Positions 33,501-61,745 of a stretch of 64,000 nucleotides of DNA are shown here, one piece after another (the stretch's first letter is position 1; every line of letters starts with the position of its first letter). This DNA comes from Octopus sinensis. Taxonomy: Eukaryota. Both the position numbers and the translations under genes were made by a program. Below the pieces are notes generated by a model. The model worked only from the letters and a program-made list of their open reading frames with translations, was not told the origin of the DNA and did no database searches. The stretch lies in assembly GCF_006345805.1 (NCBI RefSeq), contig NC_043019.1:28085360-28149359 (forward strand), in the 5' to 3' direction.

Positions 33501-34222
33501 GGGCTGGTTGATTACAATGGTTCCAGTGTTCAACTGGTACTTACTATACCAGTGCCAATAGGATGAAAGGCAAAGTTGACTTTAGTGGAGATTGAACTCA
33601 GAGCATAAAGACAGACAATTAGCTGCAGAGCATTTTGTTTGGTTTGCTAACAATTCTGCCAGCTCAATGCCTTAATAATAATAATAATAACAATAATAAT
33701 AAAAAAAAAAAAAAGATGGTATAGGCATACACCAGAAAAGGTCACAGAAAACGAGAAAGCAACCACACTCTGGGATATGCCGATACACACAGATAGAGAA
33801 ATTAAGGCCAACAGACCAGATATAGTTGTCAGAGATCATGAAGAAAAAAAATGCTTTCTAATTGATGTATCAATACCGGCAGATGACAACGTATCTCTAA
33901 AAGAAATGGAGAAACTTTCAAAATACAAAGACCTGGAAATAGAAGTAACCAGAATGTGGAATCTAAAAACAGAAACAATTCCTATCATAGTAGGTGCATT
34001 AGGCATGATTAAAAAATATTCAGACAAATACATAACAAAAACACCAGGACTTACAAACACATATAACATACAGAAAATTGCACTAGGCACTGCACACATC
34101 CTACGCAGAACACTTTCCATACAATAACCATCAGAGCATCACAACAAATCACAGCACATACCCAAGGCACACAGAGCTGCGCTCGGTAGTGAAGTGAAAG
34201 CACGCTATAAAAAATAAAACTA

Positions 34223-34256
<34 letters not shown>

Positions 34257-34466
34257 GTTTCAAATTTTGCCACAAGGGCAGCCATTTAGGGGGAGGGGAT
34301 GAGTCAATTATATCGACCCCAGTGTTTCACTGGTACTTAATTTATCGACCACGAAAGGATGAAAGAGAAAGTTGACTTTGGTGGAAGTTGAACTCGGAAC
34401 ATAGCGACAGGCTAAATACTGTTAAGCATTTCGTCCAACACGCTAACAATTCTGCCAGCACAATAA

Positions 34467-34506
<40 letters not shown>

Positions 34507-37500
34507 GATAATAATTACTGTTGCTATTATCGTACTTGTTTATTCATTTATCTTATCTTGAGCAGGATATAATTATTAGCGTCACAGATCGGAACAATGG
34601 AATATTTTAAACAGAAAATGGGATCAGAAGAAAGCAGGGAGAAATGCAGGAGAATAGAAGGTTGTGTTGTTCATGTTGAAGGCATAAGTGGCAGAAATCA
34701 AGTGATGTTGCATCAGAGATTGTACTCCTATTACACTGAGCATTTCCTTTTTATTTTAGACTTCCCTTCATTGTCGAGTGCTTGTAGTAAAGTTGAAACA
34801 GAATTGAAACCATGAAGCAGTGCATTGTTATGAACATCCTTTTCTACTCTAGGCACAAGGCCCGAAATCTTTGGGGGAGGAGGCCAGTCAATTAGACTGC
34901 CCCCAGTACACAATTAGTGCTTAATTTATTGACCCCGAAAGAATGAAAGGTGAAGTTGAACTTGGCAGAATTTGAACTCAGAATGTAAAGACAAACGAAA
35001 TACTGCTAAGCATTTCGCCCAGCATGCTAACATTTCTGCCAGCTTGCTGCCTTACATTGTTATGAATATCACCACCTGTTTGTATTTATGGCCGCAGCTG
35101 CCACACGAAGGTAAAAAGAAAAATAATAAAAAAAAACCCAGCATCCAGTCAGTTAATGATGATGAGTGTCCCATGTGACACAATCAATGGAACAGCCTGC
35201 TCTTGAAATTAGCATGCAAGTGGCTGAACCCTTCACAAACATGTGTACCCTTAACATAGTTCTCAAAGAGATTCAGCATCGCAAAGAATGTGACAAGGTG
35301 GTCTCTTTGACTTACAGGCACAACTCATTTTTGCTAGCTGAGTGGACTGGAGTTGTGTGAAATAAAGTGTCTTGCTCAAGAGCACAATGCACCACAAGGA
35401 ATCGAACTCACAATCTTACAGTTGTGAGTCGATCTTGGAGGGTCTAACATCTTTCAAACTGGTAGCCACCCCACCCCGTAAAGTGGATACCACTGCATAG
35501 TACTAAAAGTCATCCCCTCTCCATCAAGAGTAAGACCTAATAATAAAAGTTTAGAGTTCAAGAGCCCACAGATTTTCAATATCTCGCCAAAAGAATCTTT
35601 GAGATCGACAAGATATAGATGCATGTTTGTTAAAAAAATCCCTAACAAATTTTTACCAGAGAAGCTACATGACCCCTCATCTTGGGAAGAAACAAAAATT
35701 AGGACAGCTTTGTCCCACTTCCTGGTTCACTTATAACCAAAGAGAGAAGGCTGTGGAAGTGAAGTGAAATAAACTAGCTATCAATCACACAAAGATAAGT
35801 ATCTTCGTACATAGTTTGTAACAGCTCTCAGAGTCGAGGAGTAGAGTGGGGAAAAAGTCATTTGTCTGTACTTCGTAACCACCAAATCACTGAACGTGGT
35901 AACCTGTCAGAGGGCTTCTCTGAGTCAATGAATGACAGGAATAATGGTTTTACAAGTAAAAGTAAAATATGCACGCAGGAGATGTTTCGTTGTCTTTAAA
36001 AGACATGCACAACATAGACGGAAGTGGTCACTGTGTCAAAATGTAGAAACAGACCAAAACTAACATCTCCACATACATACACTAAAGAAAAAAAATATAA
36101 ACAACAGTGATATTGGTTTCAACTTTTGGCACAAGGCTAGTAATTTCAGGGGAGGGGCTAAGTCAATTATATTCACCCCTAGTGCTTAACTGGTATTTAT
36201 TTTATCGCCCCGGAAAAGACGAAAGGCAGAGTCGACCCCGCGGCGTAAAAGCGAACGAATTATTGATAGGCATTTCTCCCAGCGTTGGGAACGATTCTGC
36301 CAGCTCAGTCACCTTATAAACATCCATGATGTTAAAGAGGTAAAATCGCTGAACGAAATGCTTAGTGGCATTTCGCCTATCTTTACGTTGCGAGTTCAAA
36401 TTTCACCGAGGTCGATTTTTGCCTTTCATCCTTCCAGGGTCGATGAAATAAATACCAGACGAACACTGATGTCGATGTCATCGGCTTAACCTTTCCCTCG
36501 GAATTGCTGGCCTTGTGCCAAAATTTGAAATCAATATAAAAACGGTAAAATTTTTATTGTACTCCTAAATATATAATTAGATAAAGAGAAATGCTGAAAT
36601 TTTCCCAATTTTCTTTGTTATTGCATCAATGTTACACCGATATTTTTAAAATATCAGACAGATGAAAAAGTCAACATAGGTTCGATTCCAGTATGCAAAC
36701 ACAATGTTACTTAAGTGTTAAATTGTGAAATTATAAAAGTTCAAATTATCGAGAGAGAGAGAGGGGGGGAGAAAACGTGCTTATTATGTTGTTGAGGATT
36801 TAACCCCAAGTCGTTCACGATCCACTGACCCAGTAGACATGATCAAAAACGATCACACCGTGTCTTCTCTAGACATACGAGAACTGTCCAATATGCCCTT
36901 TTATTTTTAAGTGTGTAATAGGCTATAATTTGAAGGAGGGCTGGCTGCTATTTTTAGTAAGCCTAATGGTTGGTATAGTCATGTTTACGCTCCGCTAGCG
37001 TGTGTATTATTATAAACTGTGAAAATGCGCCATTTAATCGTGCACGCTTATTTTATGTATGTGTCGCAATGTAATGAATGCATATAAGATGGAAATACGC
37101 ATCTGACGTAGCTCAAACATCTGCTTATAAAGCTCAATTTACGTTGGCTAACGTGGCTAGATTTGTTCATCTTATCTAAAGTTGGCAATATTTCGTCTCT
37201 AGTAGACCTTTCCGTCGATTTCCGTAAAAAAAATTTATTTTTTTTACATATGGGCTTGCGGGAACTTTTGAAGTAATGAGAGCGAAAGAGACTAAGAGAA
37301 AGCGATTGTATGACGAGGGAAGTTCTTTTGAAGTTACCGTGCATGGCAAGCATTGATGGACATGTGTGTGTGTGTTTGATGGGGTGTGGGAGACAGACAG
37401 TATGTTGTGTAAGTGAAGTGCTTCTGTTAGTGTGTGTGAAGAGACAGAGTAATGTGTGAAAGAAAGAGATAACTGAAATTTTTTACTCGGTGTATGTGTA

Positions 37501-40500
37501 TATGTATGTATATTACTTCAAAAGTTCCCGCAAGCCCATATGTAAAAAAAAAAAAATTTTTTTTTACGGAAATCGACGGAAAGGTCTACTAGAGACGAAA
37601 GATCGCCTTAAACGGCAATCTTTCGTCTCGATTTCGACTCGGCCAAGGCGCGAACAGTCCGAGGAAAACTCAGAGCAGATTGTCAACTTTTAACTAAAAA
37701 AACACACACACACATTACGTAATTGAATAAACGCATGTCCTGAATCCAGGCTTGCTCGCGAATGGTTAATGTGCGCGCGCGTGCGAGCATAATTCTTTTA
37801 GCCACAGGTCAGCCCTTATTTTGTGCATCCATGATAAAAGCGGTCCCAATAGCGACCATTCCATCTCATTTTTAAATATTACACATCTAGGGTTACCTTA
37901 TGCAATATTTCCTTCCTTTAAAAAATATTAAAAAAAACTACAAAGATGCGATTTGAGAAGCCTCGTCGTTGGTGCGTGAAAGGCGTTCCACTCATGACCA
38001 TACAATCATATATTTAGATATTACATATCTAAGACTACATTATGCGATATAGCGATATATCCTTCCATATTTTTTTTACATTGGTAAGATACGATTTGAT
38101 GGCGATTTGGCTGCTATTTCTTATAGACCGAGCGACCAAGTAGTTGTTGGTGTGATGGACCGTATGAGTTTATGTGACATTTATTACAGTTACATTACAC
38201 CAGTTAATGACATTTAATTACATGAGAGCAACAGCATGTGCGCATGCATGGGGGGGGGGTCTCTGTGTGTGTGTGTACGTATGTATGAATGGACGTATGG
38301 AAGTACGAATGTATGAACGTATGTATGAGCGTACGTACGTATACTTGAACGTACGTACGTACATATGTGTGTGTGTACATATGTATGAATGGACGTATGG
38401 AGGTACGAATGTATGAACGTATGTATGAGCGTACGTACGTATACTTGAACGTACGTACGTACATATGTGTGTGTGTACATATGTATGAATGGACGTATGG
38501 AGGTACGAATGTATGAACGTATGTATGAGCGTACGTACGTATACTTGAACGTACGTACGTACATATGTGTGTGTGTACATATGTATGAATGGACGTATGG
38601 AGGTACGAATGTATGAACGTATGTATGAGCGTACGTACGTATACTTGAACGTACGTACGTACATATGTGTGTGTATGTGGGTGAATGGATGTATGTGTGT
38701 GTGTGTGTGTACATATGTATGAATGGACGTATGGAGGTACGAATGTATGAACGTATGTATGAGCGTACGTACGTACGCATACTTGAACGTACGTACGTAC
38801 ATATGTGTGTGTGTGTATGTGGGTGAATAGATGTATGTGTGTGTGTGTACGTATGTATGAATGGAGGTATGAACGTACGTACGTACATGTGTGTGTGTGT
38901 GTGTGTGTGGGGGGGGTGAATGGATGTACGTGTGTGTGTGTGTGTGTACGTATGTATGAATGGACGTATGGAAGTACGAATGTATGAACGTATGTATGAG
39001 CGTACGTACGTATACTTGAACGTACGTACGTACATATGTGTGTGTGTACATATGTATGAATGGACGTATGGAGGTACGAATGTATGAACGTATGTATGAG
39101 CGTACGTACGTATACTTGAACGTACGTACGTACATATGTGTGTGTGTACATATGTATGAATGGACGTATGGAGGTACGAATGTATGAACGTATGTATGAG
39201 CGTACGTACGTATACTTGAACGTACGTACGTACATATGTGTGTGTGTACATATGTATGAATGGACGTATGGAGGTACGAATGTATGAACGTATGTATGAG
39301 CGTACGTACGTATACTTGAACGTACGTACGTACATATGTGTGTGTGTGTGTATGTGGGTGAATGGATGTACGTGTGTGTGTGTGTGTACATATGTATGAA
39401 TGGACGTATGGAGGTACGAATGTATGAACGTATGTATGAGCGTACGTACGTACGCATACTTGAACGTACGTACGTACATATGTGTGTGTGTGTATGTGGG
39501 TGAATAGATGTATGTGTGTGTGTGTGTACGTATGTATGAATGGAGGTATGAACGTACGTACGTACATGTGTGTGTGTGTGTGTGGGGGGGGGTGAATGGA
39601 TGTACGTGTGTGTGTGTGTGTGTACGTATGTATGAATGGACGTATGGAGGTACGAATCTATGAACGTACGTACGTATATTTGAGCGTACGTACGTACATA
39701 TATATGTGTGTGTGAATGGATGTATGTGTGTGTGTGTGTAATTTCAGGCATATGTGTTTAGTATTTGTATATATTATAAATGGGAGGAAAGAGAAAGAGA
39801 GAGTGAGAGAGGAATGAACGAAAGTAAGAAGAGTGGGAGAAGAAAAGGGACAGAACGGGAAAGGAGAGAAAGGAGAAAGAGAGAGAGAGAGAGAGAGGGA
39901 GGGAGAAGAGGGTGTATGTGCGTGTGTAATGTCGTCATAGTTTATTTCTGAACAGACTGTTGTTGTCGTTATTGTTATGGTGTCATTTAGCACCGACTGA
40001 CCCGTGGAGATTCAATCATTCTCAAGACAAACGAAGTGAAATTTGAGGAAGATCTGACTGCTGTTTCGTGGAAGTTAACGGACTAGCCATTTAGATATGC
40101 TGTGATCCAATGTCTCCCCCCTCACCTCTCCTACCCAAATCCACCGGATCCTTCGTATCAACGCCATTAGTCCGAGTTTACAAAGAAAGGTTATAATAAG
40201 TTCGATCAAAGCGAGAGACCACGTCAAAGGACTTTCGGAAACAACCCACAATTAATACCAAACTTTGGCATTCTTTCGCTTTTAAGTAGAACAAATGTCA
40301 AGCTAGTGCCAGCTGATTTCCGAACACATGACGTCATTCTGGGCAGTTTACGGGATTTTATTTATTTATTTATCTTTTATATATATTTCCCCGTTCGGCA
40401 ACGTCTTTCATCTGCTGGAGATTGCCGAACACACACACAAATCCTTTTTATATGTACGCGTGTGTGTGTGTACGCATTAGTATATATAATATAATATATG

Positions 40501-43500
40501 ATATAATATGATGTGTATGTGTGTGTATGTGCGTGTGTTATATCATCCTTTAACGACCACTTTCTACGCTGGCAAAAGTTGGACAGGCTATCATGGTCCA
40601 CATTATTTCTCATAAGAAAGCACAGCTCCTAAAGTCTGGTGCTCATACACGTCATTTGGTCCAGTTCCTATGGCTAGAAGCCCTGCTTGTTGCCAACCAC
40701 TTTACAGAGTATACTGGGTGCATTTCCTTATGGCACCAACAACTGAGAGTTTGAATAGACTTTTCCACAATGTGACTGGATTAAAGAGACCTCATATCCT
40801 CATATTTTCACTGCTTGATCACCAATCACTTTACAGTGTGCACTGTGTCCATTTTCATAGCACTGGCATGAGGGAGGTAGCCAAGTTCACCGTCACCTGT
40901 AAAGGGAGCACAGTAGGTTCTGTCTGAATGGAAAGACGGCGAGCTGGCAGAAACATGAGGAAGTGCATTGTGACCAGCAGTGTATAACAACATCTGGTAG
41001 TTTGGTAGATACAGTGATAGGCATGGCTGTGTGGTAAGAAGCTTGCTTCCCAACCATATGGTTCCAGGTTCAGTCCCCATGACACCTTGGGCAAGTGTCT
41101 TCTACTATAGCCTCAGGCTGACCAAAGCCTAGTGAGTGGATTGGGTAGATGGAAACTGAAAGAAGCCGGGCGAAATGCTTAGCGGTATTTTGTCTGCCGC
41201 TACGTTCTGAGTTCAAATTCCGCTGAGGTCGACTTTGCCTTTCATCATTTCGTGGTCGATTAAATAAGTACCAGTTATGCACTGGGGTCAATATAATAAA
41301 CTTAATCCGTTTGTCTGTCCTTGTTTGTCCTCCCAGTGTTTATCCCCTTGTGGGTAGTAAAGAAATAGGTTCTGTCTGAACAGGAGCTGGGATGTCTTTT
41401 ACACAGTCAATGTTGAGAATGTTAAGGAACTAAAGGTGTGCAGACCAAGGAGGGAACAATAACAACAGAAAGACCAGAAATGGGTAGTTAAGAGGGGATA
41501 GTTTAAGGGTATAATGGTAGTGAGAGTACTTAAAACACTGAAGTATATTTGTTCAGCTGACCAAGGAAGAGCATGGGGAGAGAGAGAGCAATGACATCAA
41601 AAGGACCAGAATGGATGGAGGTTGGAAAGAGTAAGACTATGAGGGGGGAGAAGGCAGGGATATTTGGAAGGGGGTTGATAAAAGTGATCGGTCATAGTAG
41701 AGGAGGAAAAAGTTATGAGTGAGGTGAAAGACAAGTGTAGGTATTGGATGGCAACAGATGTGGCCAGAGGAGAGAGAGTGCTGGCTAAATGGATAGAATG
41801 ACTTAATTATCATTAAAATATTAATTCTAATACTTTATGTTGTTGCATTGAACTTGTTTTGCAATAATTATCAACATGTAGTAATTTACAATTGTATTTT
41901 TGCTAATGGTTATGATTGTGGCGGAAGAGTAAAATAATAGGGAGGGAATTGCAGCTGGAGACATTGAATGTATACGAGGGGGGGAAGCAAAAGATATTCT
42001 AACACCGATGAGCTGTAGTGTGAGGTTTTGCAAAGTATTTTGATGAAACTGATGAAATGGCAAATTTCTGTTGCAGATTTTGCAAGAAGTATATATTTTC
42101 ATAATACAAAAGGAAGAAAGAACAAGAAAAGAAGAGAAAGAATAGAAAACAATGTGCTAAGTGCTGATATTAAATTATAGAAGGTCTCACACACACACAC
42201 ACACATAAATATACATATACACATGCACTTACACATGATATATAAGTTGTTTTCTTCAGTTACCAACAAAACAGATTGCTGTTTGTTTTGGATTAAAAGG
42301 CATTTATACAAAAGAATGAAACTAGCATAATATTTAATATATATTATATGAATGATAATATACATATCATGTGAATGATAATATTTCAATATATTTAGTT
42401 TTACATAGACATATGCACTTTTGTATAGAAATTATATTCAAAAGTGGATTTTAGACAAAAAAGAAACTTGTTGTGCATGTGTGCGTGTACATGTGTGTGT
42501 GAGTGTGTGTGTGTATATTGTTTTATTCTTTTACTTGTCTCAGTGATTTGACCATGGCCATGCTGGAACACTGTCTTGAAAAGTTTTAGTCAAACAAGTC
42601 AACCTAGGACTTATTTCTTTAAAGCCTAGCACTTGTTCTATCAGTCACTTTTTCATCAAACCGCTAAGTTACAGGGATGTAAACACACCAACACTGGTTG
42701 TCAAGTAGTGATGGGGCGGTAGGGCAAACATAGACAGTAAGACGTACAAACATAGGCATATATGTATATATATATATGATGGCTTCTTTCAGTTTCCATT
42801 TACCCAATCCACTCACTAGGCTTTGGTCAGCCTGAGGCTATAGTAGAAGACACTTGCCCAAGGTGTCATGGGGACTGAACCTGGAACCATATGGTTGGGA
42901 AGCAAGCTTCTTACCACACAGCCATGCCTATCACTGTATCTACCAAACTACCAGATGTTGTTATACACTGCTGGTCACAATGCACTTCCTCACATTGTTG
43001 TAGCTTTCAAAAGATGCCACCCCGCTCTGTCTAGGTGGGGTGGCATCAAGTACCACTGAACAGAGTGCCAGTCAGCCTCAGGGTTATCCATCTGCAGCTG
43101 AGTGGCCTGGAGCAATGTGAAATAAAGTGTTTTGCTAAAGAACACAATACACTGCTAGTCTAAGAATGAAAATCATGGTTTTATGATTGTGGTTGCAACA
43201 CCATAACCAATGGGCCATCGTACCTCCACACACACAGATGTGTGTGTATGTATATGTATGTATATATATATATATATATAAAACGGGCTTCTTTCAGTTT
43301 CCGTCTAACGAATCCACTCACAAGGCTTTGGTCGGCCAGAGGCTATAGTAGAAGACAATGCCCAAGGTGTCATGCAATGGGACTGAACCCGGAACCATGT
43401 GGTTGGTAAGCAAGCTACTTACCACATAGCCACTCCTGTGCCTATCATTATATGTTTGAGACATCAAGACAATCATTATCTACAATCTCAAGAATGTTTT

Positions 43501-46500
43501 TTTTTTCTGCAAAATCTTGTTCAAAGATATGCATTTTAAAGAAAGTTATGGATAAAGCAAGTGGTGACGAGAATGATGTGAAACCAGCACCCTCACCCAC
43601 TCACCTCAAAATTTAAGGTTTTCAATGTAGTTTCAATGTAATTTTCATAAACTACATCCTTGAAAATGTCTCACAGCAATATTTCATTTAAAAATTTGCA
43701 GAAATATATAAACAAACAAACTTGAGGTGTGGTGATACCAAACTGTAGTTATGCTAAAATTTCAATGATGTTAAAAAAAATACCATCACATTTTGGAATT
43801 ATTGCATTATATGTCTGTTAAATTCTTTAACTGTTTTGCTGCTATAGTTCTCTTGAAATACACTGTGAGGGCATGTGTTTCAATGATTAGGGTATTTGGC
43901 ACATGATTGTAAAGTGATGAGTTCGATTCCTGGTGGAGTTTTGTCTCCTTGAACAAGACACTTCATTTCACATTGCTCCAGCTCACTCAGCTGGCAAAAG
44001 TCAGCCATAATTGTAATTCAAAGAAGGCGGTGAGCTGGCAGAAACGCTAGCACGCCGGGCGAAATGCGTAGCCATATTTCGTCTGCTGTTAAGTTCTGGG
44101 TTCAAATTCCGCTGAGGTCGACTTTGCCTTTCATCCTTTCGGGGTCGATAAATTAAGTACCAGTTACGCACTGGGGTCGATATAATCAACTTAATCCATT
44201 TGTCTGTCCTTGTTTGTCCCCTTGTGGGTAGTAAAGATATATAATTGTAATTCAAAGGGCCAGCCTTGTCACATTCTGTGTCATGCTGAATCTCCCTGAA
44301 AACTACATTAAGGGTACACATGCCAATGAGGTGCTCAGCCACGTGCATGTTAATTTGATGAGCAGGCTGTTCCATTGATTGGATCAACTGGAACATTTGA
44401 GATAATTGACAGGTGTCAGTTGAGAGACACAGTCTTTGTTTCAATTTTGAAAACAAGTGGAGACTTGCTATGGGACAAGTGGACAGCAGGAGGAATCGTC
44501 AGAGGAAGAACTCCCATCAAGCAACTGTTTTGGCCCATTAAGTCTTGACACTTTAACACTTTAATATTGAAACCAGCTAAACCTGGCCCAAATATTAAAC
44601 CTGTTTTATGTTCAAACTGACCAGATTCAGCCTTTTATACCTACTCACAATATCATTCTAAAAATAAACTATCACATCATCAAAATCTCGAAGGTACAAG
44701 ATTATATATGATTAATTTAAAACAATGTGAATAAACTATCATTACATTTGACAGAGCAAACTGAAGGCTAAAGAGTTAAGGGGGCTGAGTTCCCCCTAAG
44801 TTATGACTTCTAGGGTGTCCTCCTGTTATCGAAATTCTGCCTATAGTGGAGTTTGAACTCAGAACATTTGAGTTACCTTATTTCCTTGAAGTATAATATA
44901 TATTGCTCGGCCATGAAGACCACTGCAAGAACTTGCACTGTGAATCTATTTCAAATTGGGTTTTCCCTCCTACTAAATAATGAAGAAATTAGTAACATAA
45001 CTTCGTAATTATTAAGCTGGTATTTGATAACATTAGACAAAATGTTTGTATAATAGAACCAAGGGCAGTCACAAGCAGGGCTAAGTAAGAAATTCATCAA
45101 GGGTTTCTCCTACTGTTTTGAAACATCTCTCCATCTTTAAAGAGAGAGTCTGGAAGATGATGACAGGAATATTTCCACAAGATGTCAAGACAGACCAGGA
45201 ACTCATCAATTCCCATTAATAAGGGGAAATGACAACATGAGCCAGCCATGGATCCCCTACCTGGTAGCTTGACTTACTACAAATAGCAACCAAATTTCAC
45301 TCAAATCACATCCTACAATCTTGAAAGATGCAATGCACAATGTAATCCTAGGTTACAAGTATGCAGAGAAAGGACCGGATGATTCCAGTCGGAATGCCTT
45401 TGATTATAGGTCTGTCCAATCAGGGTTGACCTGGGGCTACATAACAATGTGGCAGATGATGCAATAAATTTGAAGCTTGAAATTTTAGAGGTGAGTCTGA
45501 TGATACGAAGCCAGGTATTTTTAGGTGAGGGTCAAACATGCTTAAACTCATTCCTATTGAAGGAAAGACTAAACTAAGAAAACTATTGGTGCTTTGGACA
45601 AAATGCCTTGCAGTATTGAGTCACAGCCTGTTCTAAGTTCAAATCTCACTGAGATAAATTTAGCTATTCATGCTGTGCTTGAGGAGACCTATTGAGTCAA
45701 GTACATCAACATCAAAATAAAAATCAGATGGATATTGTAGTTGTGATACCCATGCTGGTGGCACGTTGGGCCTCACAAAGGCAATGACGAAAGACCGAGA
45801 CCTCTGAGATATGATGCGACTGCGAAGACCCAACAAATGAAGTGAGTTCATGGCTCGCAGGACGGCCTGCTGTGCTAACCTTGGATCGTAGGGCGACCTG
45901 CTGTGCTTGAGGAGACCTGTTGAGTCAAGTACGTCAACATCAAAATAAAAATCAAATGGAAATTGTAGTTGTGATACCTGTGCCGGTGGCACATAAAAAG
46001 CACCATCTGAACGTGGCCTATGCCAGTGCCGCCTTGACTGGCGTCTGTGCAGGTGACACGTAAAAAGCACCAACTGATAGTGACAGTTTGCCAGCCTCTT
46101 CTGGCCCCTGTGCCGGTGGTACATAAAAAGCACCCACTACCTTCAGAGAGTGGTTGGCATATGGAAGGGCATCCAGCTGTAGAAACACTGCCAGATCAGA
46201 CTGGAGCTTGGTGCAGCCTCCTGGCTTCCAAGACCCCAGTCGAACCGTCCAACCCATGCTAGTATGGAAAACGGACGTTAAATGATGATGATGATCCTTC
46301 CAATAATTTCTGGAATTTCAGGTTTTGTGCCTGCTTCAGAAATGATAGGTACTGGTAATTACAACCATAGACATACGTATTGCCAACGACTAGGTCTTTA
46401 GAATCGTTTGTGCCAACATTCCATTCTAAAATGTCTGTTGATTATCTTCCCCACACATTTTCTGAACCACTTCCAAATTGCTTTAATGTCTGTAAGTTTA

Positions 46501-49454
46501 CGAAATCATATTCTTCCATCTACCAATACAGACGCCCTGGATATTTTTCAATTGCATCCTGAATTCTTAAATTCTTTGTCCACCCAGCTGATACCCTAGT
46601 GACAGTGAAAACACACACACACACAGAACTCTGCTGAGTACGTCAACAGATTTATGTCGAGCATAAGAAAACTAAACTAATTTGGTAATGGAAGAATTTC
46701 AATTTTTTTTTTTATTTAAAAATGGTTAACAAATATAATTCAGCATGTTGACGTCTGTTATCAAGTTACTGAGTTCAAATCGAGACGTAATTACAGTGGG
46801 TGTGTCACCAATTACAACTTTTATCGCTACAGTGGGAGGGGCGGCGCTGATCAAAATAGTCGTTGTTGCTGCTGTTTAACCCATGGTCGGGCCTGAATCA
46901 AGCGGAACTAAGCTGAAATGTATCCCTGCTTTTATAGTATTTACTAGGACTAAATTCGTTGACATTCCTCCTTTCAGACGGGAGGATGTGTTTTGGCTGC
47001 TATTTCTAGCAGGTCGAACACTCGTTGTCTTTATGCTGTGTTCTATAATCTGTATATACAGACACAAATGATATATTATATAAACTCATACAAACATATG
47101 CACATACTTATACACACGCACATACGTAGATACATACATACGCGTGCTCGTATGTTATATTTTCCATGTTTTTCTTGTGTTATTACCTCATCTTGGAGGG
47201 AAGGAGGCGGATACTTCGTCCGAAGCAGTTCCAATCTCAAATACTTGTATTACCGTGTGTGTGTGTGTGTGTGTGTTCCAAGCAGTGTAATCCACACTGA
47301 AATGACAAAAGTAGGAAATCGAAATCGCAACTTTTTTGCTTCCGATCCTTGACTTGATTATAGCTAAAGCTCAATGCTCCATCATTTACAAAGTTGACTT
47401 CGAAAGGATTCTGAGTTCGAATTCTACCGAAGTCAATATTACCCTTTCATTCTTCTCGGGGCGAAAGAATAGAAACACACCAGTCAACAACGGAGATCGA
47501 TGACATCAACAAATCACCTTCCCTCAAAAATTGCTGCTCTTGGGCCTAAACTCGAAACAATTATTATTATTAACTGTTATGGATGTAAAAAAATCATTCC
47601 ATGTAAGAGATGTCAGCCGACCCAACCAGACTTTAGTGTTTTCATCGCAATTGTTAATTGGATTCTTGCTAATTTCTATAAATAACAGCAAAACTTTTTA
47701 AGGATATTAATTCAATCTCCTTCCTTTTTTACAATAGTCATAAAATAGAATTTTTAAAAACTCGTGAAATCAGCTGAAATCATCATCATCATGTGATTGT
47801 GACGATCGGAATATTTCGTCTATGAACATCACTTATTCTTATAGCTCTATCCTCATCGAACATTATTATTATTACTGGATTAAGGCGGCCAGCTTAGCAG
47901 AATCGCTGGCACCCAGGGCAAAATACTTCGTCCGTCTTAATGTTCTGATCTCAAATTCCGTCGAGGTCGACTTTGCTTGTAATCTTTTCGGGGTCGATAA
48001 AATAAGTACTCTTTGAACACTGAGGTCGACTTATCCTACCCACCGAAATTGCAGGCCTTGTGCCAAAAATTTGAAATTATTGTTATTATTATTATTATCA
48101 TTATTGGACAATTTGGTGGGGGGAGGCACTGGACAGTGTTTTGTCCCATTATGTTCCAAGTACGAACACCACCAAGTTGGAGGATGCAACTTGTTTGTCA
48201 AACTCCAAGATTATTGTTGCTAACAAATTCTAGTTCCAGCCTCGAGAGACAAAAATAAACAAATAAATAAAGTCAAAAGTATTTATGCCATGACCATCCC
48301 TCCCGCTTTATATAAAAAAAAATACATCAACTAGCACCACATTATCCAGGTGTCCTTTTCCTTGTGACTTCTGGGATATTTGACTGCTATTTCTCGCTGG
48401 TCGAGCGGCCCTGTAAATGCCTTTTGTCGGTTCGTTTCTTCTAGATTTAATGAAATAAATACTCCTCAGAGAATGGGGTCGATTTAAATCTCTATACTTT
48501 TCTCACCCTTAAATGAATGTGTGATCTTGTGTTCATGTTAGAAACCAACGTCCTTACGATCTGAGTTCAAATTCAGCTGAGGGTAACTTTGCCTTTCTTC
48601 CTTTCGGGGGTCGATAAAATAAGTACCAGTCGAGTACTTGAATCGATTAGCCTCCTCCCCGAAAATTTCAGGCCTTGGGCCTCATAGTAGAAAGGATTAT
48701 TATGATTAGCAAGCACTGATGTCATATGTTGGAGATTAGCCATTGCACGGATCCCTCATTATGACTAGTTCTTCTATGGTGACCACCTCACATCAACACC
48801 TGTGGCACGGAAGGGGTGAGCAACAAAGTTAACTAAGGCGAAATTCGAACCCAAAATAGTACGGTAATAATACTAGGGTACCTAGTAACCATAATCATTC
48901 CTACCATTTATGAGCGGCAGTCGAAGAAATCATCATCATCATCTATTAACATGTTTTTCGGGCAAACATGCTCTGCCGTATTTCGATACCGTCCTTTTAT
49001 GTTCAGGGTTCGAATAGCACCGAGGTTAGTTGTGGTTTCTTTCTTCCCGGGATCGATAACACAAAGCACCAAACAAGAAGTGGGATTGATTCCTATTCCT
49101 AGAAAACATCCTAAATATGAAAGGAAGCCGACTTTGTTTTTCCAATCCTCTGTCTGGGTGGTCGACGAAATAAAGAACCTATTAAGTACTAAACGAAAGG
49201 GGTTTTTGAACGGATTTATAAGTAACATGTTTGGCATGGGGCCCTCGACTAAAAAGTCTCCGTCCTTTATATTCCTAGAGTTTCTTGTTTTCCTTTGTGT
49301 TTTACTAATTGTTCCACCATCTCTCCATCGTGTGTGGGGTGGAGTGCTGAAGAAAAAAAAATCTGTTGCCGAAACAACAACAAAGGAGAGAAATAAAAGC
49401 GAACGAAAACAAATGATGATAATAAAATGGAAATTGCAGCGACTTACCTGTCAT
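205..49454 (-). CDS. SNX29: Sorting nexin-29 (RUN + coiled-coil + PX), 20 coding exons in window, 3' end beyond window start
   Basis: All 20 exons have GT-AG boundaries and matching phases; total 2301 nt = 767 codons without a stop. Diagnostic peptides: LLTRLLDAVKQCQVRFGGRRELATDGDSR, GRGRAWLRASLNERSLERY, YEKKLIQVAEMHGELIEFNE, VYIRIQDEEWNVYRRY, all matching recalled vertebrate SNX29. Confidence 0.93.
877..1262 (+). mobile_element. Non-autonomous Helitron-like element
   Basis: Inserted between A and T; 5' TC, 3' subterminal hairpin (cccgagcaacactggg) then CTAG; internal 101-bp tandem duplication. Confidence 0.7.
1742..1832 (-). CDS. SNX29: SNX29 exon 19 (NLTITPRNLVHVWIPSAFLRGLSSDTYHVYQ), PX start
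   Basis: 91 nt, phase 2 to 0. Confidence 0.93.
1925..2385. repeat. Compound (TATC)/(TGTC) microsatellite
   Basis: Direct reading; explains the three overlapping low-complexity ORFs. Confidence 0.95.
2485..2537 (-). CDS. SNX29: SNX29 exon 18 (LPDEGPSYSDCVSLDVD)
   Basis: 53 nt, phase 0 to 2, long polypyrimidine tract. Confidence 0.88.
2810..3120 (+). mobile_element. CR1-type LINE 3' fragment
   Basis: Encodes ...FFTLRVTEAWNKLPASVV..., same 3' UTR as the 15.9-16.6 kb copy, ends in (ATT)n. Confidence 0.8.
3982..4098 (-). CDS. SNX29: SNX29 exon 17 (VAEMHGELIEFNEALH...LHGP)
   Basis: 117 nt, phase 0 to 0, donor gtctgt. Confidence 0.94.
4785..5240 (-). mobile_element. tRNA-headed SINE with internal duplication
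   Basis: Minus-strand head TGGCTCAGTGGTTAGAGC...GAGTTCAATTACC (A/B boxes); ~100-bp internal repeat. Confidence 0.65.
5448..5554 (-). CDS. SNX29: SNX29 exon 16 (GSLGIHLDELQPVIPPPKSSIDYSHEASEYEKKLIQ)
   Basis: 107 nt, phase 1 to 0. Confidence 0.92.
6269..6351 (-). CDS. SNX29: SNX29 exon 15 (KENELLRHQLKKYVNAVQLLRKEGTKAE)
   Basis: 83 nt, phase 2 to 1; an in-frame alternative donor would start the exon at 6284. Confidence 0.9.
6509..6637 (-). CDS. SNX29: SNX29 exon 14 (RSLQQLLSQEKE...KIQSLQ), coiled coil
   Basis: 129 nt, phase 2 to 2. Confidence 0.9.
7477..7540 (-). CDS. SNX29: SNX29 exon 13 (SELKKAIVTMMVRKDHVEEQN)
   Basis: 64 nt, phase 1 to 2; weak gtttct donor, but the peptide matches SELRQA..AMMNRKDELEEEN. 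Confidence 0.88.
8951..9018 (-). CDS. SNX29: SNX29 exon 12 (CQSYRTEGDGGNVQQDTHNEMTT)
   Basis: 68 nt, phase 2 to 1, gtaagt donor. Confidence 0.85.
9278..9735. mobile_element. Non-coding interspersed element in (TAA)n, truncated copy
   Basis: 458 bp homologous to 32652-33109; flanked by (TAA)n. Confidence 0.85.
10864..11017 (-). CDS. SNX29: SNX29 exon 11 (GNTSDYKIYSNSDVESAAFALAQAQK + poly-Asn/Ser)
   Basis: 154 nt, phase 1 to 2, strong polypyrimidine acceptor, gttagt donor. Confidence 0.8.
13197..13276 (-). CDS. SNX29: SNX29 exon 10 (NYCKDLLIPVTLSGVGAQTNKKESSQQ)
   Basis: 80 nt, phase 2 to 1, ttttag acceptor, CAAG/gtaagt donor; LLIPVT..GVG resembles recalled human ILFPVSGVG. Confidence 0.85.
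14509..14728. mobile_element. TTAA-flanked MITE (piggyBac-like)
   Basis: TTAA-CCCTTTCGTTAC...GTAACAAAAGGG-TTAA; second copy inverted at 24348-24562. Confidence 0.75.
15200..15737 (-). CDS. SNX29: SNX29 exon 9 (ERKRDRKKKKLPNIVTFSDDDD...LELDG), Ser-rich linker
   Basis: 538 nt open frame, phase 1 to 2; basic then acidic stretch as in vertebrate SNX29. Confidence 0.92.
15870..16570 (-). mobile_element. 5'-truncated CR1-type LINE (RT C-terminus + 3' UTR), frameshifted
   Basis: LYIAMVRPHLEFAS / PVWNPYLAKDINRLEAVQRRATKRIP / YPERLTSLGMDTLKLRR are CR1-clade motifs. Confidence 0.85.
16873..17122 (+). pseudogene. Three tandem tRNA-Arg(UCG)-derived pseudogenes (16873-16945, 16962-17033, 17050-17122)
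   Basis: Copies read like GACC.CGTGGCCTAATGGATAAGGCGTCTGACTTCG.ATCAGAAGATT..GGTTCGAGTC with many G>A and C>T changes; D and acceptor stems broken; 16-bp spacers are homologous. Confidence 0.8.
17860..18018 (-). CDS. SNX29: SNX29 exon 8 (GLGSILFALIIDNPEINSP...KPTIS)
   Basis: 159 nt, phase 1 to 1, gtaagt donor. Confidence 0.92.
18266..18500 (-). mobile_element. Full-length tRNA-derived SINE with 13-bp TSD, nested in another SINE
   Basis: TSD AGGCATGCATACC at 18253-65 and 18501-13; A/B-box-like head (TGGCAGAAA..., GAGTTCAAATTCC). Confidence 0.9.
18730..19140 (-). mobile_element. Degenerate Tx1/L1-like RT fragment
   Basis: Minus strand AIVTLLKKKPNKEQKETFDNLRP then, after a frameshift, LNTEIKL; resembles the RT motif xxYRPIxLLNxxxKIL. 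Confidence 0.5.
19491..19561 (-). CDS. SNX29: SNX29 exon 7 (SQYYEDWSFLRDQERSSMLPNMAA)
   Basis: 71 nt, phase 2 to 1, gtgagc donor. Confidence 0.94.
19602..20286 (-). mobile_element. Internally deleted mariner remnant
   Basis: Peptides PQLSYSLDLEFC (YSPDLAPCD-like), LFPKSKSTLKGHQFQ, ELCIAPENVFQDAFQNWQK and GEIYFDGD; decayed TIRs (ta)tgaggtctgtctaaaa and ttctttacagaccctc. Confidence 0.75.
20775..20949 (-). CDS. SNX29: SNX29 exon 6 (AFWQNIKEHLTKHEVQRF...GRGRAWLRASLNE...DDIL), RUN domain
   Basis: 175 nt, phase 1 to 2; RUN-domain signature GRGRAWLR. Confidence 0.95.
22197..22428 (-). mobile_element. Full-length tRNA-derived SINE with 15-bp TSD
   Basis: TSD TCATCATATAATACT at 22182-96 and 22429-43. 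Confidence 0.9.
22717..22781 (-). CDS. SNX29: SNX29 exon 5 (KQVSEITGLRKVTRFVDMEPYP)
   Basis: 65 nt, phase 2 to 1, gtaagc donor. Confidence 0.85.
23360..23440 (-). CDS. SNX29: SNX29 exon 4 (RVSCLCAAWEAVLQYGLRYSNKAFSAL), RUN domain
   Basis: 81 nt, phase 2 to 2, tgcag acceptor, gtaagt donor. Confidence 0.92.
24348..24562. mobile_element. TTAA-flanked MITE, second copy in opposite orientation
   Basis: TTAA-CCCTTTCATTAC...GTAACGAAAGGG-TTAA. A related family with TTAA(C/T)CTTTAGCAT-like ends occurs near 5.85, 44.6, 51.55, 53.7 and 57.05 kb. Confidence 0.75.
24620..25025 (-). mobile_element. Interspersed SINE-like repeat ending in (GAT)n, with internal tandem sub-repeats
   Basis: Homologous to 12190-12540, 21660-21960 and 45670-46295; ends ...CGTTAAA(TGA)n; RTE-type tail is an inference. 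Confidence 0.7.
26878..26930 (-). CDS. SNX29: SNX29 exon 3 (CQVRFGGRRELATDGDS)
   Basis: 53 nt, phase 0 to 2, gtaagt donor. Confidence 0.93.
30287..30351 (-). CDS. SNX29: SNX29 exon 2 (DYDAHLAERQSLLTRLLDAVKQ)
   Basis: 65 nt, tacag acceptor, gtaata donor, phase 1 to 0. Confidence 0.92.
32553..33109. mobile_element. Non-coding interspersed element in (TAA)n, longer copy (~557 bp)
   Basis: Same right end (ctctctcactc-aataat) as the 9.3-kb copy, about 100 bp longer at left. Confidence 0.85.
33715..34225 (+). mobile_element. 5'-truncated R4/Dong-like non-LTR retrotransposon (restriction-like endonuclease domain) in a (TAA)n tract
   Basis: Open frame WYRHTPEKVTENEKATTLWDMPIHTDREIKANRPDIVV...FLIDVSIP...KLSKYKDL...IPIIVGALG; PD-(D/E)xK RLE pattern; flanked by (TAA)n on both sides. 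Confidence 0.85.
37184..37629. repeat. Foldback structure: ~90-bp inverted repeats plus terminal 16-bp hairpin
   Basis: 37191-37277 is the reverse complement of 37512-37600 apart from A/T-run lengths; 37592-607 pairs with 37614-629. Confidence 0.85.
38265..39740. repeat. ACGT-rich minisatellite, 100-bp unit with ~677-bp higher-order duplication
   Basis: AGGTACGAAT recurs at 38401, 38501 and 38601; variant units recur 676-678 bp apart. Confidence 0.92.
40929..41365 (+). mobile_element. tRNA-derived SINE with 15-bp TSD, interrupted by a 212-bp templated insert
   Basis: TSD TAGGTTCTGTCTGAA at 40914-28 and 41366-80. Confidence 0.9.
44024..44240 (+). mobile_element. Full-length tRNA-derived SINE with 17-bp TSD, nested in another SINE
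   Basis: TSD ATAATTGTAATTCAAAG at 44007-23 and 44241-57. Confidence 0.9.
49448..49454 (-). CDS. SNX29: SNX29 coding exon 1 (ATG ACA G)
   Basis: ATGACAG followed by GTAAGT donor; phase 1 matches exon 2; lies next to the shared promoter. Confidence 0.7.
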
Positions 49455-49717
49455 TTCTGGTGTCAAGAGAAATAAGGTGATATATATGTGTACATGTATA
49501 CATATATAATATAGGGGTTAGGTAGATGTGGTTGGTTATAGTTTTGTAAATATGTATGTATTTGTGAATGTATACATATGCGTGTGTATATGTATATATT
49601 TGTATATGCGTGTGTATATATATATGTATATATATATATATGTCTGTGTGTATATATAAGTATGTATATAAATGCTATATATGTATGTGAATGTGTTTGT
49701 ATATATGCATATAAAGA

Positions 49718-49764
<47 letters not shown>

Positions 49765-49877
49765 GCACGTAAGTATGTATACGAATGCTGTGTGTGTGTC
49801 TGTGTGTGTAAATCCACAGCAGCCGATCAAACAAGTCTCGCCATCAACCTCTTCCCGTTGTGACTGCAATAAACAAA

Positions 49878-49947
49878 TCATGTGATCTGTGACGTCACTT
49901 CCGGAACTGTGGCCTTTTCCCGGTACTACCTTGTTAGGGTATACACG
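49878..49947 (+). promoter_or_regulatory. Bidirectional SNX29/RPL10 core promoter, TCT/5'TOP initiator and non-coding RPL10 exon 1
   Basis: TCATGTGA (49878-85), TGACGTCACTTCCGG (49890-904), CCTTTTCC TCT-type initiator at ~49913-20, donor CG/gtgagt at 49947/8. Confidence 0.8.
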
Positions 49948-50157
49948 GTGAGTTTTTACCTCTTGTCTTCATCTTTTGTAATCTTGTTGCTTTTCCCATT
50001 CAATCCGTCTACATTTACTTCTAGATTTATTCGTGAATGTTTAGTCTGTAATATTTAAAATGTCTTTAACGGAAAAAAAAATCCTTGACTCGTTTCTTTT
50101 AGAGCAATCGGATAGCACTGTGTCTCACGTTCCATTTCCTTCATTTCAGCTGCGAAA

Positions 50158-55403
<5,246 letters not shown>

Positions 55404-55425
55404 TTTTATAAACTACATAACTGGA

Positions 55426-55431
55426 AATAAA
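55426..55431 (+). terminator. RPL10 polyadenylation signal AATAAA
   Basis: AATAAA about 23 nt after the stop codon, consistent with the short 3' UTR of ribosomal protein genes. Confidence 0.75.
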
Positions 55432-56052
55432 AAGCAAAAAAATCTTACCACCTTTCTCTTCATTTTATTTTCTTCATCCCTTAGGCACAAAAAAGCCTGA
55501 AATTTATAGGATGTCTGTTGGAATGTTGTCAGAATTTAACGTTTTGATTACAGTGAATATCCCCCTCAAGTTTACAATTAACTAAGAGATAATGGTAATT
55601 TATTCATTGACCCTGTCGGACCTGGACTCCCAAGCAAAAAGATGTTCTGGTAATACTTGTGTTTGTGAAAACTGCATCAGTGTTTATATTGCTCCTGTGC
55701 TGATCTTTCGCAAAGGTGTTGAAAACAAAACAAAGCCAAATCACTTGGATTAATTATTCAGACATTGTAGTGATTGGTGAGTGACATAAGTTATGACGCT
55801 TGCATTGCAGCTTTGATGTACTGGGTTTCATCCCATTGTGGTATCTTAGCTAAATGTCATTTTTTATAACTTCACATCAACACATACCTCATGGTAGGGA
55901 AATTTGAAAGAAGCCTGTCGGTCGGTATGGCTTTGTGACACTATATTCTACCTGGGAATTATGTTATGGGTACATGCCTGTGGAATGCTGAGCCACAGCC
56001 TTCATCACATTTCTGGTAGTTTTTTTTTATTCAAGTGCTAAAACCTGGAATT

Positions 56053-56319
56053 CTACAATGACCAACTACATAGCATCTTGTTTGTTAGGACAATGGTAGC
56101 TGTCCTCACCAATTCCACATTTAGGGAGTGAAGGATATTGGTGCTGTGATGCTGGTTCAGATTATTAATGTGTTTGCAAAGAGGGCATTGGATTTCATGA
56201 ACTGCAGCAATGATTTTTGACATTTTGATGGTGTGTTCAAGATGTCTCTTGTTGACAAAAAGTTTGTGCTGAGTTACGTTTGGACTTCTCCAGCCCCATG
56301 GAATATTCATAGTGCCCAC
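56053..56319 (-). mobile_element. Possible decayed Tc1/mariner-superfamily transposase C-terminal fragment
   Basis: NIPWG..PNVTQH..KIIAAVHEI loosely resembles DYxxWG.LE.KVN..PH...LK..I; weak. Confidence 0.3.
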
Positions 56320-60052: not shown

Positions 60053-60108
<56 letters not shown>

Positions 60109-60200
60109 AAAGTTAATCCAAACATGAAGGCACAAAAAACACAACAACGCGAGGACGTGGAACAAATATAGTATTATTGGACGCTCAGGAAAGAAGGAGG

Positions 60201-60235
60201 GTTTAACGTTTCGAGCGGAGCTCTTCGTCGGAAAC
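60201..60235 (-). ncRNA. Minimal type I hammerhead ribozyme-like motif, copy 1
   Basis: Minus strand GUUU-CCGACGA-A-GAGC(UCC)GCUC-GAAA-CGUU/AAAC: helix I GUUU/AAAC, helix II 4 bp, palindromic ACGU helix III; U4C and a GUU triplet are deviations from consensus. Confidence 0.6.

Positions 60236-61712: not shown

Positions 61713-61745
<33 letters not shown>

What the first reader, a model, noticed from the sequence alone, without database searches (positions are those of the whole stretch)
40914..42992. 212-bp inverted templated insertion inside a SINE, copied from 1.6 kb away
Seen: 40956-41167 is the reverse complement of 42781-42992 at 211/212 identity, including about 65 bp of non-SINE flank, so it is not merely two family members. 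It replaces the 8-nt GTTAGCAC of an otherwise intact SINE head, uses a GCC microhomology at the right junction, and the whole composite sits within one 15-bp TSD. Read in SINE orientation the insert is sense to the SNX29 pre-mRNA. Inference: either double template switching by the reverse transcriptase onto the nascent host pre-mRNA during insertion, or later microhomology-mediated (Pol theta/MMBIR-type) repair. The pair forms a near-perfect 212-bp dsRNA in SNX29 intron 1, a likely ADAR substrate in a lineage known for heavy A-to-I editing.
Basis: partly seen in the sequence, partly recalled or inferred. Interest (0 to 1): 0.7.

Follow-up and report, generated by a model that had tools for sequence, protein, structure and literature searches.

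The report
Inverted repair copy inside an octopus SINE
In Octopus sinensis, a break in an old SINE within intron 1 of SNX29 was patched with a 212-base inverted copy of DNA from 1.6 kb away; this is a known kind of repair scar, dated here because O. vulgaris still has the unbroken SINE.

Summary
Window 40956-41167 is the reverse complement of 42781-42992 at 211/212. It includes about 63 nt of non-SINE flank. It replaces GTTAGCAC in a SINE head, shares GCC at the right junction, and lies inside one 15-bp target-site duplication.

The window is Octopus sinensis chromosome CM016881.1. The locus lies in intron 1 of the SNX29 orthologue, which is on the minus strand.

The orthologous O. vulgaris locus has the same SINE at the same site with the same duplication. 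That SINE is intact and has no insert. Template switching by a reverse transcriptase during SINE insertion is therefore refuted. A later DNA-level templated insertion in the O. sinensis lineage is supported.

At the single mismatch, the insert keeps the base found in O. vulgaris and O. bimaculoides. The donor changed afterwards, which argues against an assembly artefact.

The arms are predicted to form a 211-bp RNA duplex; ADAR editing is untested.

This is a large, well-polarised example of a known mutation class, of modest interest. A second inverted local copy (338 nt, donor 12.7 kb away) sits in the head of another SINE in the same gene. This coincidence deserves a genome-wide test.

The parts
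40914..40928 (.). Left copy of the 15-bp target-site duplication TAGGTTCTGTCTGAA of the host SINE
   Evidence: Exact match to 41366-41380. The same duplication flanks the O. vulgaris orthologue.
40929..40954 (+). Head of the host SINE (family A), ending ...GAGCTGGCAGAAAC
   Evidence: Alignment to four other full copies and to the O. vulgaris orthologue.
40955..40955 (+). Odd junction base A. Both the SINE and the donor predict G. It may be a 1-nt microhomology later mutated at a CpG, or a misincorporation where copying ended.
   Evidence: O. vulgaris SINE reads GAAACG; the donor complement reads ...AATG|TGAGG.
40956..41018 (+). Insert part 1: inverted copy of single-copy intron sequence upstream of the donor SINE (donor 42930-42992)
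   Evidence: It matches only the donor in the window. The donor flank is orthologous in O. vulgaris and O. bimaculoides.
41019..41167 (+). Insert part 2: inverted copy of the body of a family-B SINE (donor 42781-42929). The last 3 nt, GCC (41165-41167), are shared with the host SINE. The single mismatch is at 41148.
41168..41365 (+). Remainder of the host SINE (family A), resuming at GGGCGAAATGC
41366..41380 (.). Right copy of the target-site duplication
41168..42780 (.). The 1613 nt between the arms. This is the loop of the predicted RNA hairpin and of the proposed snap-back intermediate.
42758..42780 (.). (TA)n-rich simple repeat that abuts the end of the donor where copying is inferred to have started
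   Evidence: Sequence read; alignment.
42781..42992 (-). Donor tract: family-B SINE body (42781-42929, minus strand) plus 63 nt of its upstream flank. Base 42800 changed C to T after the copy was made.
   Evidence: O. vulgaris, O. bimaculoides and the insert all carry C at this position.
30352..49447 (-). Intron 1 of the SNX29 orthologue. Exon 1 CDS ATGACAG lies at 49454-49448 with donor GT at 49447-49446. The acceptor AG is at 30353-30352, and exon 2 is 30351-30287.
   Evidence: The called gene (RUN+PX, 859 aa) ends at 49454. Sequence. Exon order from tblastn. SNX29 identity.

Best explanation
This is a DNA-level templated insertion, made when a germline break or stalled replication fork in the head of an already resident SINE was repaired in the O. 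sinensis lineage. The inferred steps follow. The break fell in or next to GTTAGCAC. On the right-hand end, the 3'-ending strand (minus strand, ...CGCCCGGC-3') paired through GGC/GCC with the same strand 1.6 kb further along, next to a (TA)n run. This could be a snap-back on resected single-stranded DNA, or a switch to the nascent or sister strand. A polymerase copied 212 nt (42784 to 42992). The extended end came off, perhaps after a terminal misincorporation recorded as 40955 A. It was then joined to the left end with 0-1 nt of homology. Eight nucleotides of the SINE were lost. The product is an inverted duplicate whose arms lie in one intron. Shown: the copy, its orientation, the junctions, the 8-nt loss, and that the insert is secondary to the SINE. 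Inferred: which end primed, the snap-back geometry, and the enzymes involved.
For: O. vulgaris has the same SINE, the same site and the same duplication, with an intact ...GAAACGTTAGCACGCC... and no insert. The insert therefore came after the SINE. The donor is present in all three Octopus species. At the single mismatch, the insert, O. vulgaris and O. bimaculoides all have C, and only the O. sinensis donor has T. This means real evolutionary time, or allelic variation, separates copy and donor. There is one difference in 212 nt. If the copy predated the species split, 3.7-6.8 differences would be expected (P = 0.009-0.12). The junctions show 3 nt of microhomology at one end, 0-1 nt at the other, an 8-nt deletion and no duplication around the insert. 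This is the asymmetric pattern described for foldback insertions, with synthesis at one end and end-joining capture at the other (PMC11724301). Reverse-complement orientation is the stated signature of snap-back synthesis (PMC5068794). There are no N gaps in the 64-kb window.
Against: 212 nt copied from 1.6 kb away is far outside the usual polymerase-theta insert, which is under 25 bp and about 85% primed within 10 bp (PMC5068794). It is also above the yeast foldback range of 2 to about 150 bp (PMC11724301). A snap-back would need more than 2 kb of resection. Only one assembly per species was available and no reads. A DNA template cannot be told apart from a nascent-RNA template with these data. 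The left junction has no secure microhomology.
Confidence: 0.72

Rival explanations
1. RNA-templated break repair. The same break was patched by reverse transcription of nascent SNX29 intron-1 RNA, as in a class 2 templated-sequence insertion, primed by the same GGC/GCC pairing.
For: The donor lies in intron 1 of a minus-strand gene, and the insert is in the orientation that the right-hand 3' end would produce on sense RNA. Class 2 insertions have exactly these junction features: microdeletion, microhomology and no duplication (PMC5110952). The single mismatch reads donor A to insert G in pre-mRNA sense, which is the direction an A-to-I edited template would give.
Against: An inverted orientation is expected half the time with a DNA template as well. 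Nothing marks the insert as RNA-derived; it has no splice junction and no tail. The G at the mismatch is the ancestral base in two outgroups, so a later donor mutation explains it with one fewer event. Before the insert existed, the donor had no close inverted partner to make it an editing substrate.
Confidence: 0.15
2. Assembly or sequencing artefact in the O. sinensis PacBio assembly, from a chimeric or foldback read.
For: Only one O. sinensis assembly was available. Junction-spanning ORF look-ups found no independent contig. That assembly has more gaps and duplicated BUSCOs than the O. vulgaris one (PMC10700109).
Against: The insert differs from the donor at one base, and there it carries the ancestral state rather than the assembled donor's state. 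The junctions are clean, with an 8-nt loss and microhomology inside a continuous 64-kb gap-free stretch. Missed-adapter chimeras produce read-end foldbacks, not a 212-bp internal insertion.
Confidence: 0.05
3. Double template switching by the reverse transcriptase during the original SINE insertion.
For: The composite lies within a single target-site duplication, and the insert is sense to the host pre-mRNA.
Against: O. vulgaris has the orthologous SINE with the identical duplication and no insert. The host SINE has 7-8 lineage-specific changes per species and 10 shared changes against the consensus, whereas insert and donor differ by one.
Confidence: 0.01
4. The composite is ancestral, and O. 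vulgaris lost the insert through gene conversion from another SINE copy or through lineage sorting of an old polymorphism.
For: Ectopic conversion between SINE copies is known in principle. O. vulgaris has two unusual bases just right of the junction, GCCAGTCG against GCCGGGCG.
Against: It needs two events instead of one, plus exact restoration of GTTAGCAC. Those two O. vulgaris bases are not consensus-like, so they do not look like a converted tract. Insert-donor divergence is lower than expected for a copy older than the split.
Confidence: 0.03

Closest known systems
Snap-back templated insertions of alternative end joining (SD-MMEJ / polymerase-theta-mediated end joining; PMC2943611, PMC5068794)
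   Same: Reverse-complement copy of flanking DNA in cis, microhomology priming, a small deletion, no duplication, and possibly an error at the point where synthesis stopped.
   Different: Typical inserts are under 25 bp and primed within about 10 bp of the break. Here 212 nt were copied from 1.6 kb away. Enzyme dependence is unknown.
Foldback inverted insertions at breaks in yeast (Pol delta synthesis at one end, NHEJ/alt-EJ capture at the other; PMC11724301)
   Same: Asymmetric junctions (3 nt against 0-1 nt), inverted local copy, hybrid synthesis-plus-joining logic.
   Different: The yeast events span 2 to about 150 bp with loops of tens of nucleotides. Here the loop would be 1613 nt. That paper also reports that extensive resection suppresses the yeast events.
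Replication template-switch mutations, four-point model (PMC5453318), which create RNA hairpins (PMC8794818)
   Same: One event replaces a few bases with a reverse-complement copy of nearby sequence and so creates a perfect stem in the transcript.
   Different: Described events are short-range and short, of tens of bases. This one is an order of magnitude larger in both length and distance.
FoSTeS/MMBIR templated insertions (PMC8421209)
   Same: Microhomology-primed polymerase switch to a nearby template. Insert sizes of hundreds of bases and kilobase distances are ordinary for this class.
   Different: These are usually seen in complex rearrangements or cancer genomes. Here it is a simple two-junction germline event with only 0-1 nt of homology at one junction.
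Class 2 templated sequence insertion polymorphisms (PMC5110952)
   Same: Patch at a break with microdeletion and microhomology, and no duplication or poly(A).
   Different: Those patches come from distant, RNA-derived donors. Here the donor is 1.6 kb away in cis, and RNA origin is unproven.
Inverted SINE pairs as ADAR substrates (PMC526178, PMC5625713)
   Same: Two oppositely oriented copies in one intron, predicted to form long dsRNA.
   Different: The arms did not arise by two retrotranspositions. They are 99.5% identical and include non-SINE sequence. Editing was not measured.

Membership tests
Snap-back / foldback templated insertion at a DNA break | Insert is a near-exact copy of nearby sequence on the same chromosome | tested here: met
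   211/212 identity; donor 1613 nt away.
Snap-back / foldback templated insertion at a DNA break | Reverse-complement orientation relative to the template | tested here: met
   Criterion as stated in PMC5068794 (S7 Fig legend).
Snap-back / foldback templated insertion at a DNA break | Microhomology at the priming junction, a small deletion at the break, and no duplication around the insert | tested here: met
   GCC shared at 41165-41167. GTTAGCAC is lost relative to the O. vulgaris allele. No repeat flanks the insert.
Snap-back / foldback templated insertion at a DNA break | A pre-insertion allele exists, so the insert is secondary to the surrounding sequence | tested here: met
   The O. vulgaris orthologue is intact.
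Polymerase-theta-mediated end joining in the strict sense | Short insert (mostly under 25 bp) templated within about 10 bp of the break | tested here: not met
   212 nt copied from 1.6 kb away. Ranges from PMC5068794.
Polymerase-theta-mediated end joining in the strict sense | Dependence on POLQ | not testable with these tools
   Requires genetics.
FoSTeS/MMBIR or four-point template switch | Microhomology at both switch points | tested here: inconclusive
   3 nt at one junction. At the other there is 0 nt as read, or 1 nt if 40955 was originally G.
FoSTeS/MMBIR or four-point template switch | Template nearby in cis, with return to the original template a few bases on | tested here: met
   Donor 1.6 kb away; return skips 8 nt.
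Chimeric retrocopy made by reverse-transcriptase template switching during insertion | The chimera arises together with the insertion, so every carrier of the SINE carries the insert | tested here: not met
   O. vulgaris has the SINE without the insert.
Class 2 templated sequence insertion (RNA patch) | End-joining junctions without duplication or poly(A) | tested here: met
Class 2 templated sequence insertion (RNA patch) | Proof that the template was RNA (splice junction, editing, transcript ends) | tested here: inconclusive
   The donor is intronic and on the transcribed strand. The one A/G difference is better explained by a later donor mutation.
Mobile composite SINE subfamily | The same composite at many unrelated loci | tested here: not met
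   In the window, the 63-nt flank occurs only in the two arms. Of about 20 family-A-type heads in the window, only this one is interrupted, and none is interrupted in the O. vulgaris or O. bimaculoides loci. A genome-wide search was not possible.
ADAR substrate (intramolecular inverted-repeat dsRNA) | Both arms in one transcript, forming a long duplex | tested here: met
   Both arms lie in SNX29 intron 1. The minimum-free-energy fold has 211 in-register pairs, and the duplex energy is -438 kcal/mol. This is a prediction only.
ADAR substrate (intramolecular inverted-repeat dsRNA) | Clustered A-to-G mismatches in RNA reads | not testable with these tools
   No RNA-seq access.

The most novel reading that the evidence does not exclude
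Local inverted template-switch copying may be a recurrent process in octopus genomes that preferentially strikes SINE heads (the Pol III promoter region or short palindromes). It could be a real source of the unusually many near-perfect local inverted repeats, and hence long intronic dsRNAs, reported for Octopus. The window holds only two inverted pairs of at least 96% identity. In each pair one arm is a 212-338-nt inverted local copy that replaces about 8 nt roughly 25-30 nt into a SINE, in two different SINE families within the same gene.
Probability: 0.12. Interest if true: 0.7.

Novelty: new member of a known kind. Interest (0 to 1): 0.35.

Why it matters
This is a naturally occurring, phylogenetically polarised example of a long inverted templated insertion. 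The pre-event allele survives in the sister species, so both junctions, the 8-nt loss and the microhomology can be read without guesswork. In a single step it created a 212-bp near-perfect RNA stem in an intron. That illustrates, at larger scale, the idea that template switching creates hairpins de novo. Octopus genomes are reported to be exceptionally rich in near-perfect local inverted repeats and in hyper-editing (PMC5625713). If events like this are common, they would explain part of that richness without any need for pairs of young SINE insertions. As a single locus it is a tidy case study, not a discovery.

Tried and rejected
1. I looked for independent contigs carrying the junctions by exact look-up of the two junction-spanning ORFs. 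Nothing was on record, so the assembly could not be cross-checked.
2. O. bimaculoides was tried as an outgroup for the host SINE. The orthologous stretch contains an N gap and different repeat content between window positions of about 40.7 and 42.78 kb. It is informative only for the donor.
3. ARAGORN and Rfam were run on 40.0-44.5 kb and 40.8-43.5 kb to classify the SINE heads. There were no tRNA calls and only sub-threshold microsatellite-like miRNA hits.
4. A homology search with the Ser-rich exon (15196-15693) returned no octopus protein. Gene identity was established instead from domain calls, tblastn and a multi-exon query.
5. A nested retrotransposition of the family-B SINE was rejected. 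The insert carries 63 nt of 5' flank, lacks the simple-repeat tail and has a deletion instead of a duplication.
6. Local Osin-Ovul divergence as a sign of error-prone fill-in was considered. The region 40.6-45 kb is more diverged (about 3%) than 45.5-52 kb (0-1.4%). However, divergence is very uneven across the whole 16 kb (0-6.6% per 500 bp), so no conclusion was drawn.
7. Dating the event from the single mismatch is too imprecise. It shows only that the data fit a post-split origin better.
8. The O. vulgaris orthologue of the second inverted pair could not be fetched with the available anchors.

Full report
**The observation.**
Window 40956-41167 is the reverse complement of 42781-42992 over 212 nt. 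There is one mismatch, 41148 G against donor 42800 T (A on the reverse complement). The match stops sharply at both ends. This is far more than two members of one repeat family would show. The other family-B SINE copies in the window are 73-89% identical to the insert and begin at about insert position 64-69. The first 63 nt or so of the insert (40956-41018) match nothing in the window except the donor flank 42930-42992. A self-comparison of the whole window finds only two inverted pairs of at least 96% identity and 60 bp, and this is one of them.

**Anatomy of the recipient.**
The insert sits in a family-A SINE on the plus strand (40929-41365). The SINE is bounded by a perfect 15-bp target-site duplication, TAGGTTCTGTCTGAA, at 40914-40928 and 41366-41380. 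Four other full copies in the window give the local consensus ...GGCAGAAAC GTTAGCAC GCC GGGCGAAATGC.... The composite reads GGCAGAAAC-A-[TGAGG...GAAGCC]-GGGCGAAATGC.
- Eight nucleotides (GTTAGCAC) are missing.
- GCC at 41165-41167 could come from either the SINE or the donor end. The donor continues ...GAAGCC|ATCATATA.
- Base 40955 is A. Both the SINE and the donor predict G there (the donor complement reads ...AATG|TGAGG).
- That A is therefore either a 1-nt microhomology later hit by a CpG transition, or a misincorporation where copying stopped.

**Where the window comes from.**
An RPL10 gene lies on the plus strand at about 51.4-55.4 kb. Its protein led to three chromosome-scale Octopus loci. 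Locus L003 is O. sinensis GCA_006345805.1, chromosome CM016881.1. It is 100% identical to window 40158-64000, so the window is O. sinensis. L002 is the O. vulgaris orthologue and L001 the O. bimaculoides orthologue. In all three, a RUN+PX gene on the minus strand abuts RPL10 head to head.

**The gene and the intron.**
The gene is the SNX29 orthologue.
- A PX exon lies at 82-312 on the minus strand.
- Exons are collinear with human SNX29, recalled from memory, from residues 10-23 at 30328-30287 down to the PX domain at 345-103.
- A multi-exon query hits only sorting nexin 29 proteins, with E-values down to 1e-106.
- The CDS starts with ATGACAG at 49454-49448, followed by GTAAGT.
- The next coding exon, 30351-30287, follows an AG acceptor in the matching phase.

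The finding therefore lies in intron 1, about 19.1 kb long. The pre-mRNA is minus-strand sense, and the insert read in SINE orientation is sense to it.

**The decisive comparison.**
In O. vulgaris the orthologous site carries the same family-A SINE in the same target-site duplication. It reads ...GGCAGAAACGTTAGCACGCCAGTCGAAATGC..., which is intact, with the 8 nt present and no 212-bp insert. The SINE therefore inserted before the two species separated, about 2.5 Mya according to PMC10700109, and the insert arose later. This refutes template switching by the reverse transcriptase during SINE insertion and supports a later repair event.

Three further observations support that order of events.
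- The donor SINE and its flank are present in all three species.
- At the single mismatch, the insert, O. vulgaris and O. bimaculoides all carry C on the plus strand; only the O. sinensis donor carries T. The insert preserves the ancestral base, and the donor changed, or was polymorphic, afterwards.
- One difference in 212 nt is fewer than the 3.7-6.8 expected if the copy predated the split (P = 0.009-0.12).

The host SINE itself has 7 O. sinensis-only and 8 O. vulgaris-only changes against the in-window consensus, plus 10 shared ones.

**Mechanism.**
The product has the hallmarks of a templated insertion made during break or fork repair. It is a reverse-complement copy of nearby sequence in cis. 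One junction has 3 nt of microhomology and the other 0-1 nt. There is a small deletion and no duplication around the insert.

Reading the bottom strand gives the simplest path.
1. The 3' end of the right-hand break end (...CGCCCGGC-3', minus strand) pairs through GGC with GCC on the same strand at 42783-42781, next to a (TA)n run.
2. It is extended from 42784 to 42992.
3. It dissociates and is joined to the left end.

Because primer and template lie on the same strand, this could be an intramolecular snap-back on resected DNA with a 1613-nt loop. It could equally be a switch to the nascent or sister strand at a fork. The sequence cannot tell these apart, nor exclude capture of a displaced fragment.

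The published descriptions fit qualitatively.
- Snap-back synthesis gives reverse-complement inserts (PMC5068794).
- Yeast foldback insertions use synthesis at one end and end-joining capture at the other (PMC11724301).
- Template switching creates perfect hairpin stems (PMC5453318, PMC8794818).

Quantitatively the event is large. Polymerase-theta inserts are mostly under 25 bp and primed within about 10 bp (PMC5068794). Yeast foldbacks reach about 150 bp (PMC11724301). I therefore file it under microhomology-primed template switching in general, not under polymerase-theta joining specifically.

**Rivals.**
- *RNA-templated patch.* A patch copied from nascent intron RNA (class 2 templated sequence insertion, PMC5110952) has the same geometry, because the gene is on the minus strand. 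The single mismatch is A to G in sense orientation, as an edited template would give. But G is the ancestral base, so a later donor mutation is simpler. Nothing else marks an RNA origin.
- *Assembly artefact.* This is unlikely, given the ancestral base in the insert, the clean junctions and a gap-free 64-kb context. It could not be excluded with reads, and the junction ORF look-ups found nothing.
- *Ancestral composite later restored in O. vulgaris.* This needs an extra, exact event.
- *Mobile composite subfamily.* No evidence in the sequence available. Among about 20 family-A-type heads in the window, only this one is interrupted, and none is interrupted in the other two loci.

**Consequence.**
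Folding 2151 nt of minus-strand RNA gives 211 in-register pairs between the arms. The minimum free energy is -782 kcal/mol, against -437 with the insert removed, and the duplex alone is -438 kcal/mol. The one mismatch is an A opposite C. Both arms lie in one intron, so a long near-perfect dsRNA is expected in the pre-mRNA. That ADAR edits it is plausible by analogy with inverted SINE pairs (PMC526178, PMC5625713), but it was not tested.

**A second case, seen in passing.**
The only other high-identity inverted pair in the window is 15859-16188 against 2791-3121: 331 nt, 97.6% identical, 12.7 kb apart, in the same gene.
- Aligning the low-coordinate copy to family-C SINEs shows that it, too, sits inside a SINE head.
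- That locus reads ...TTTAACATCCTTTTCC | 338 nt | ATGGGTTGGAC..., where the consensus has ATGCTAGC, the centre of the 12-nt palindrome CATGCTAGCATG.
- One junction shares 1 nt, and the other has a 7-nt filler.
- Of about 8 family-C heads in the window, only this one is interrupted.
- SINE families A, B and C cover 12.6% of the window. Two of two such events landing roughly 25-30 nt into a SINE is therefore unexpected under random placement. This is a post hoc observation on two cases, and I could not fetch the orthologues.
- Octopus is reported to be exceptionally rich in near-perfect inverted matches within 2 kb (PMC5625713), so a genome-wide survey is worthwhile.

**Verdict.**
The event is a large, cleanly polarised member of a known mutation class. 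It is of modest interest on its own, with a low-probability but testable extension to a recurrent process.

Noticed in passing
window 2791-3128 and 15859-16188: A second inverted local copy in SNX29. 331 nt at 97.6% identity, plus a 7-nt filler (CAATACT), replace ATGCTAGC in the head of a family-C SINE on the minus strand. The replaced bases are the centre of the palindrome CATGCTAGCATG. The donor is 12.7 kb away and borders an AT-rich simple repeat. The architecture matches the finding.
   Followed up: partly
window 40955: The junction base is A, although both the SINE (O. vulgaris, consensus) and the donor predict G. It is either a CpG transition after the event or a terminal misincorporation that ended copying.
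   Followed up: partly
window 42758-42780: The donor tract starts 2-3 nt from a (TA)n run, which is exactly the end of the family-B SINE body. AT-rich repeats next to the start of copying occur in both inverted copies.
   Followed up: no
L002 1186-1398 (between window 41964 and 41965) and L002 3264-3623 (at window 43810/43811): O. vulgaris-specific insertions: a 213-bp element with terminal inverted repeats TTAACCCTTTAG.../...CTAAAGGGTTAA, and a 360-bp family-C SINE. Both belong to multi-copy families, so transposons have been active since the split.
   Followed up: partly
window 37185-37631: A 447-bp segment with roughly 95-bp terminal inverted repeats (37184-37277 / 37512-37607, 94.8%) is absent from the O. 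bimaculoides orthologue, where only 4 nt separate the flanks. It looks like a MITE-type insertion.
   Followed up: no
window 60050-62575: Three tandem copies of a unit of about 830 bp at 98.4-99.3% identity. Each carries a 117-119-aa ORF (MESRSELCLPYLQKK...) on the minus strand.
   Followed up: no
window 49448-51514: SNX29 (minus strand, ATG at 49454) and RPL10 (plus strand; called gene starts at 50158, first recognised coding exon at 51458-51514) lie head to head about 700 bp apart. The arrangement is shared by O. sinensis, O. vulgaris and O. bimaculoides.
   Followed up: partly
window 40578-57000 against L002: O. sinensis / O. vulgaris substitution divergence is very uneven. It is 0% in 46.0-47.0 kb and 49.5-50.0 kb, about 3-4% in 40.5-45 kb, and 4.7-6.6% in an RPL10 intron (53.0-54.0 kb).
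   Followed up: no
window 9276-9755 and 32650-33129: A two-copy direct pair, 480 bp at 93.5% identity and 22.9 kb apart, in SNX29 introns. Its nature is unknown.
   Followed up: no
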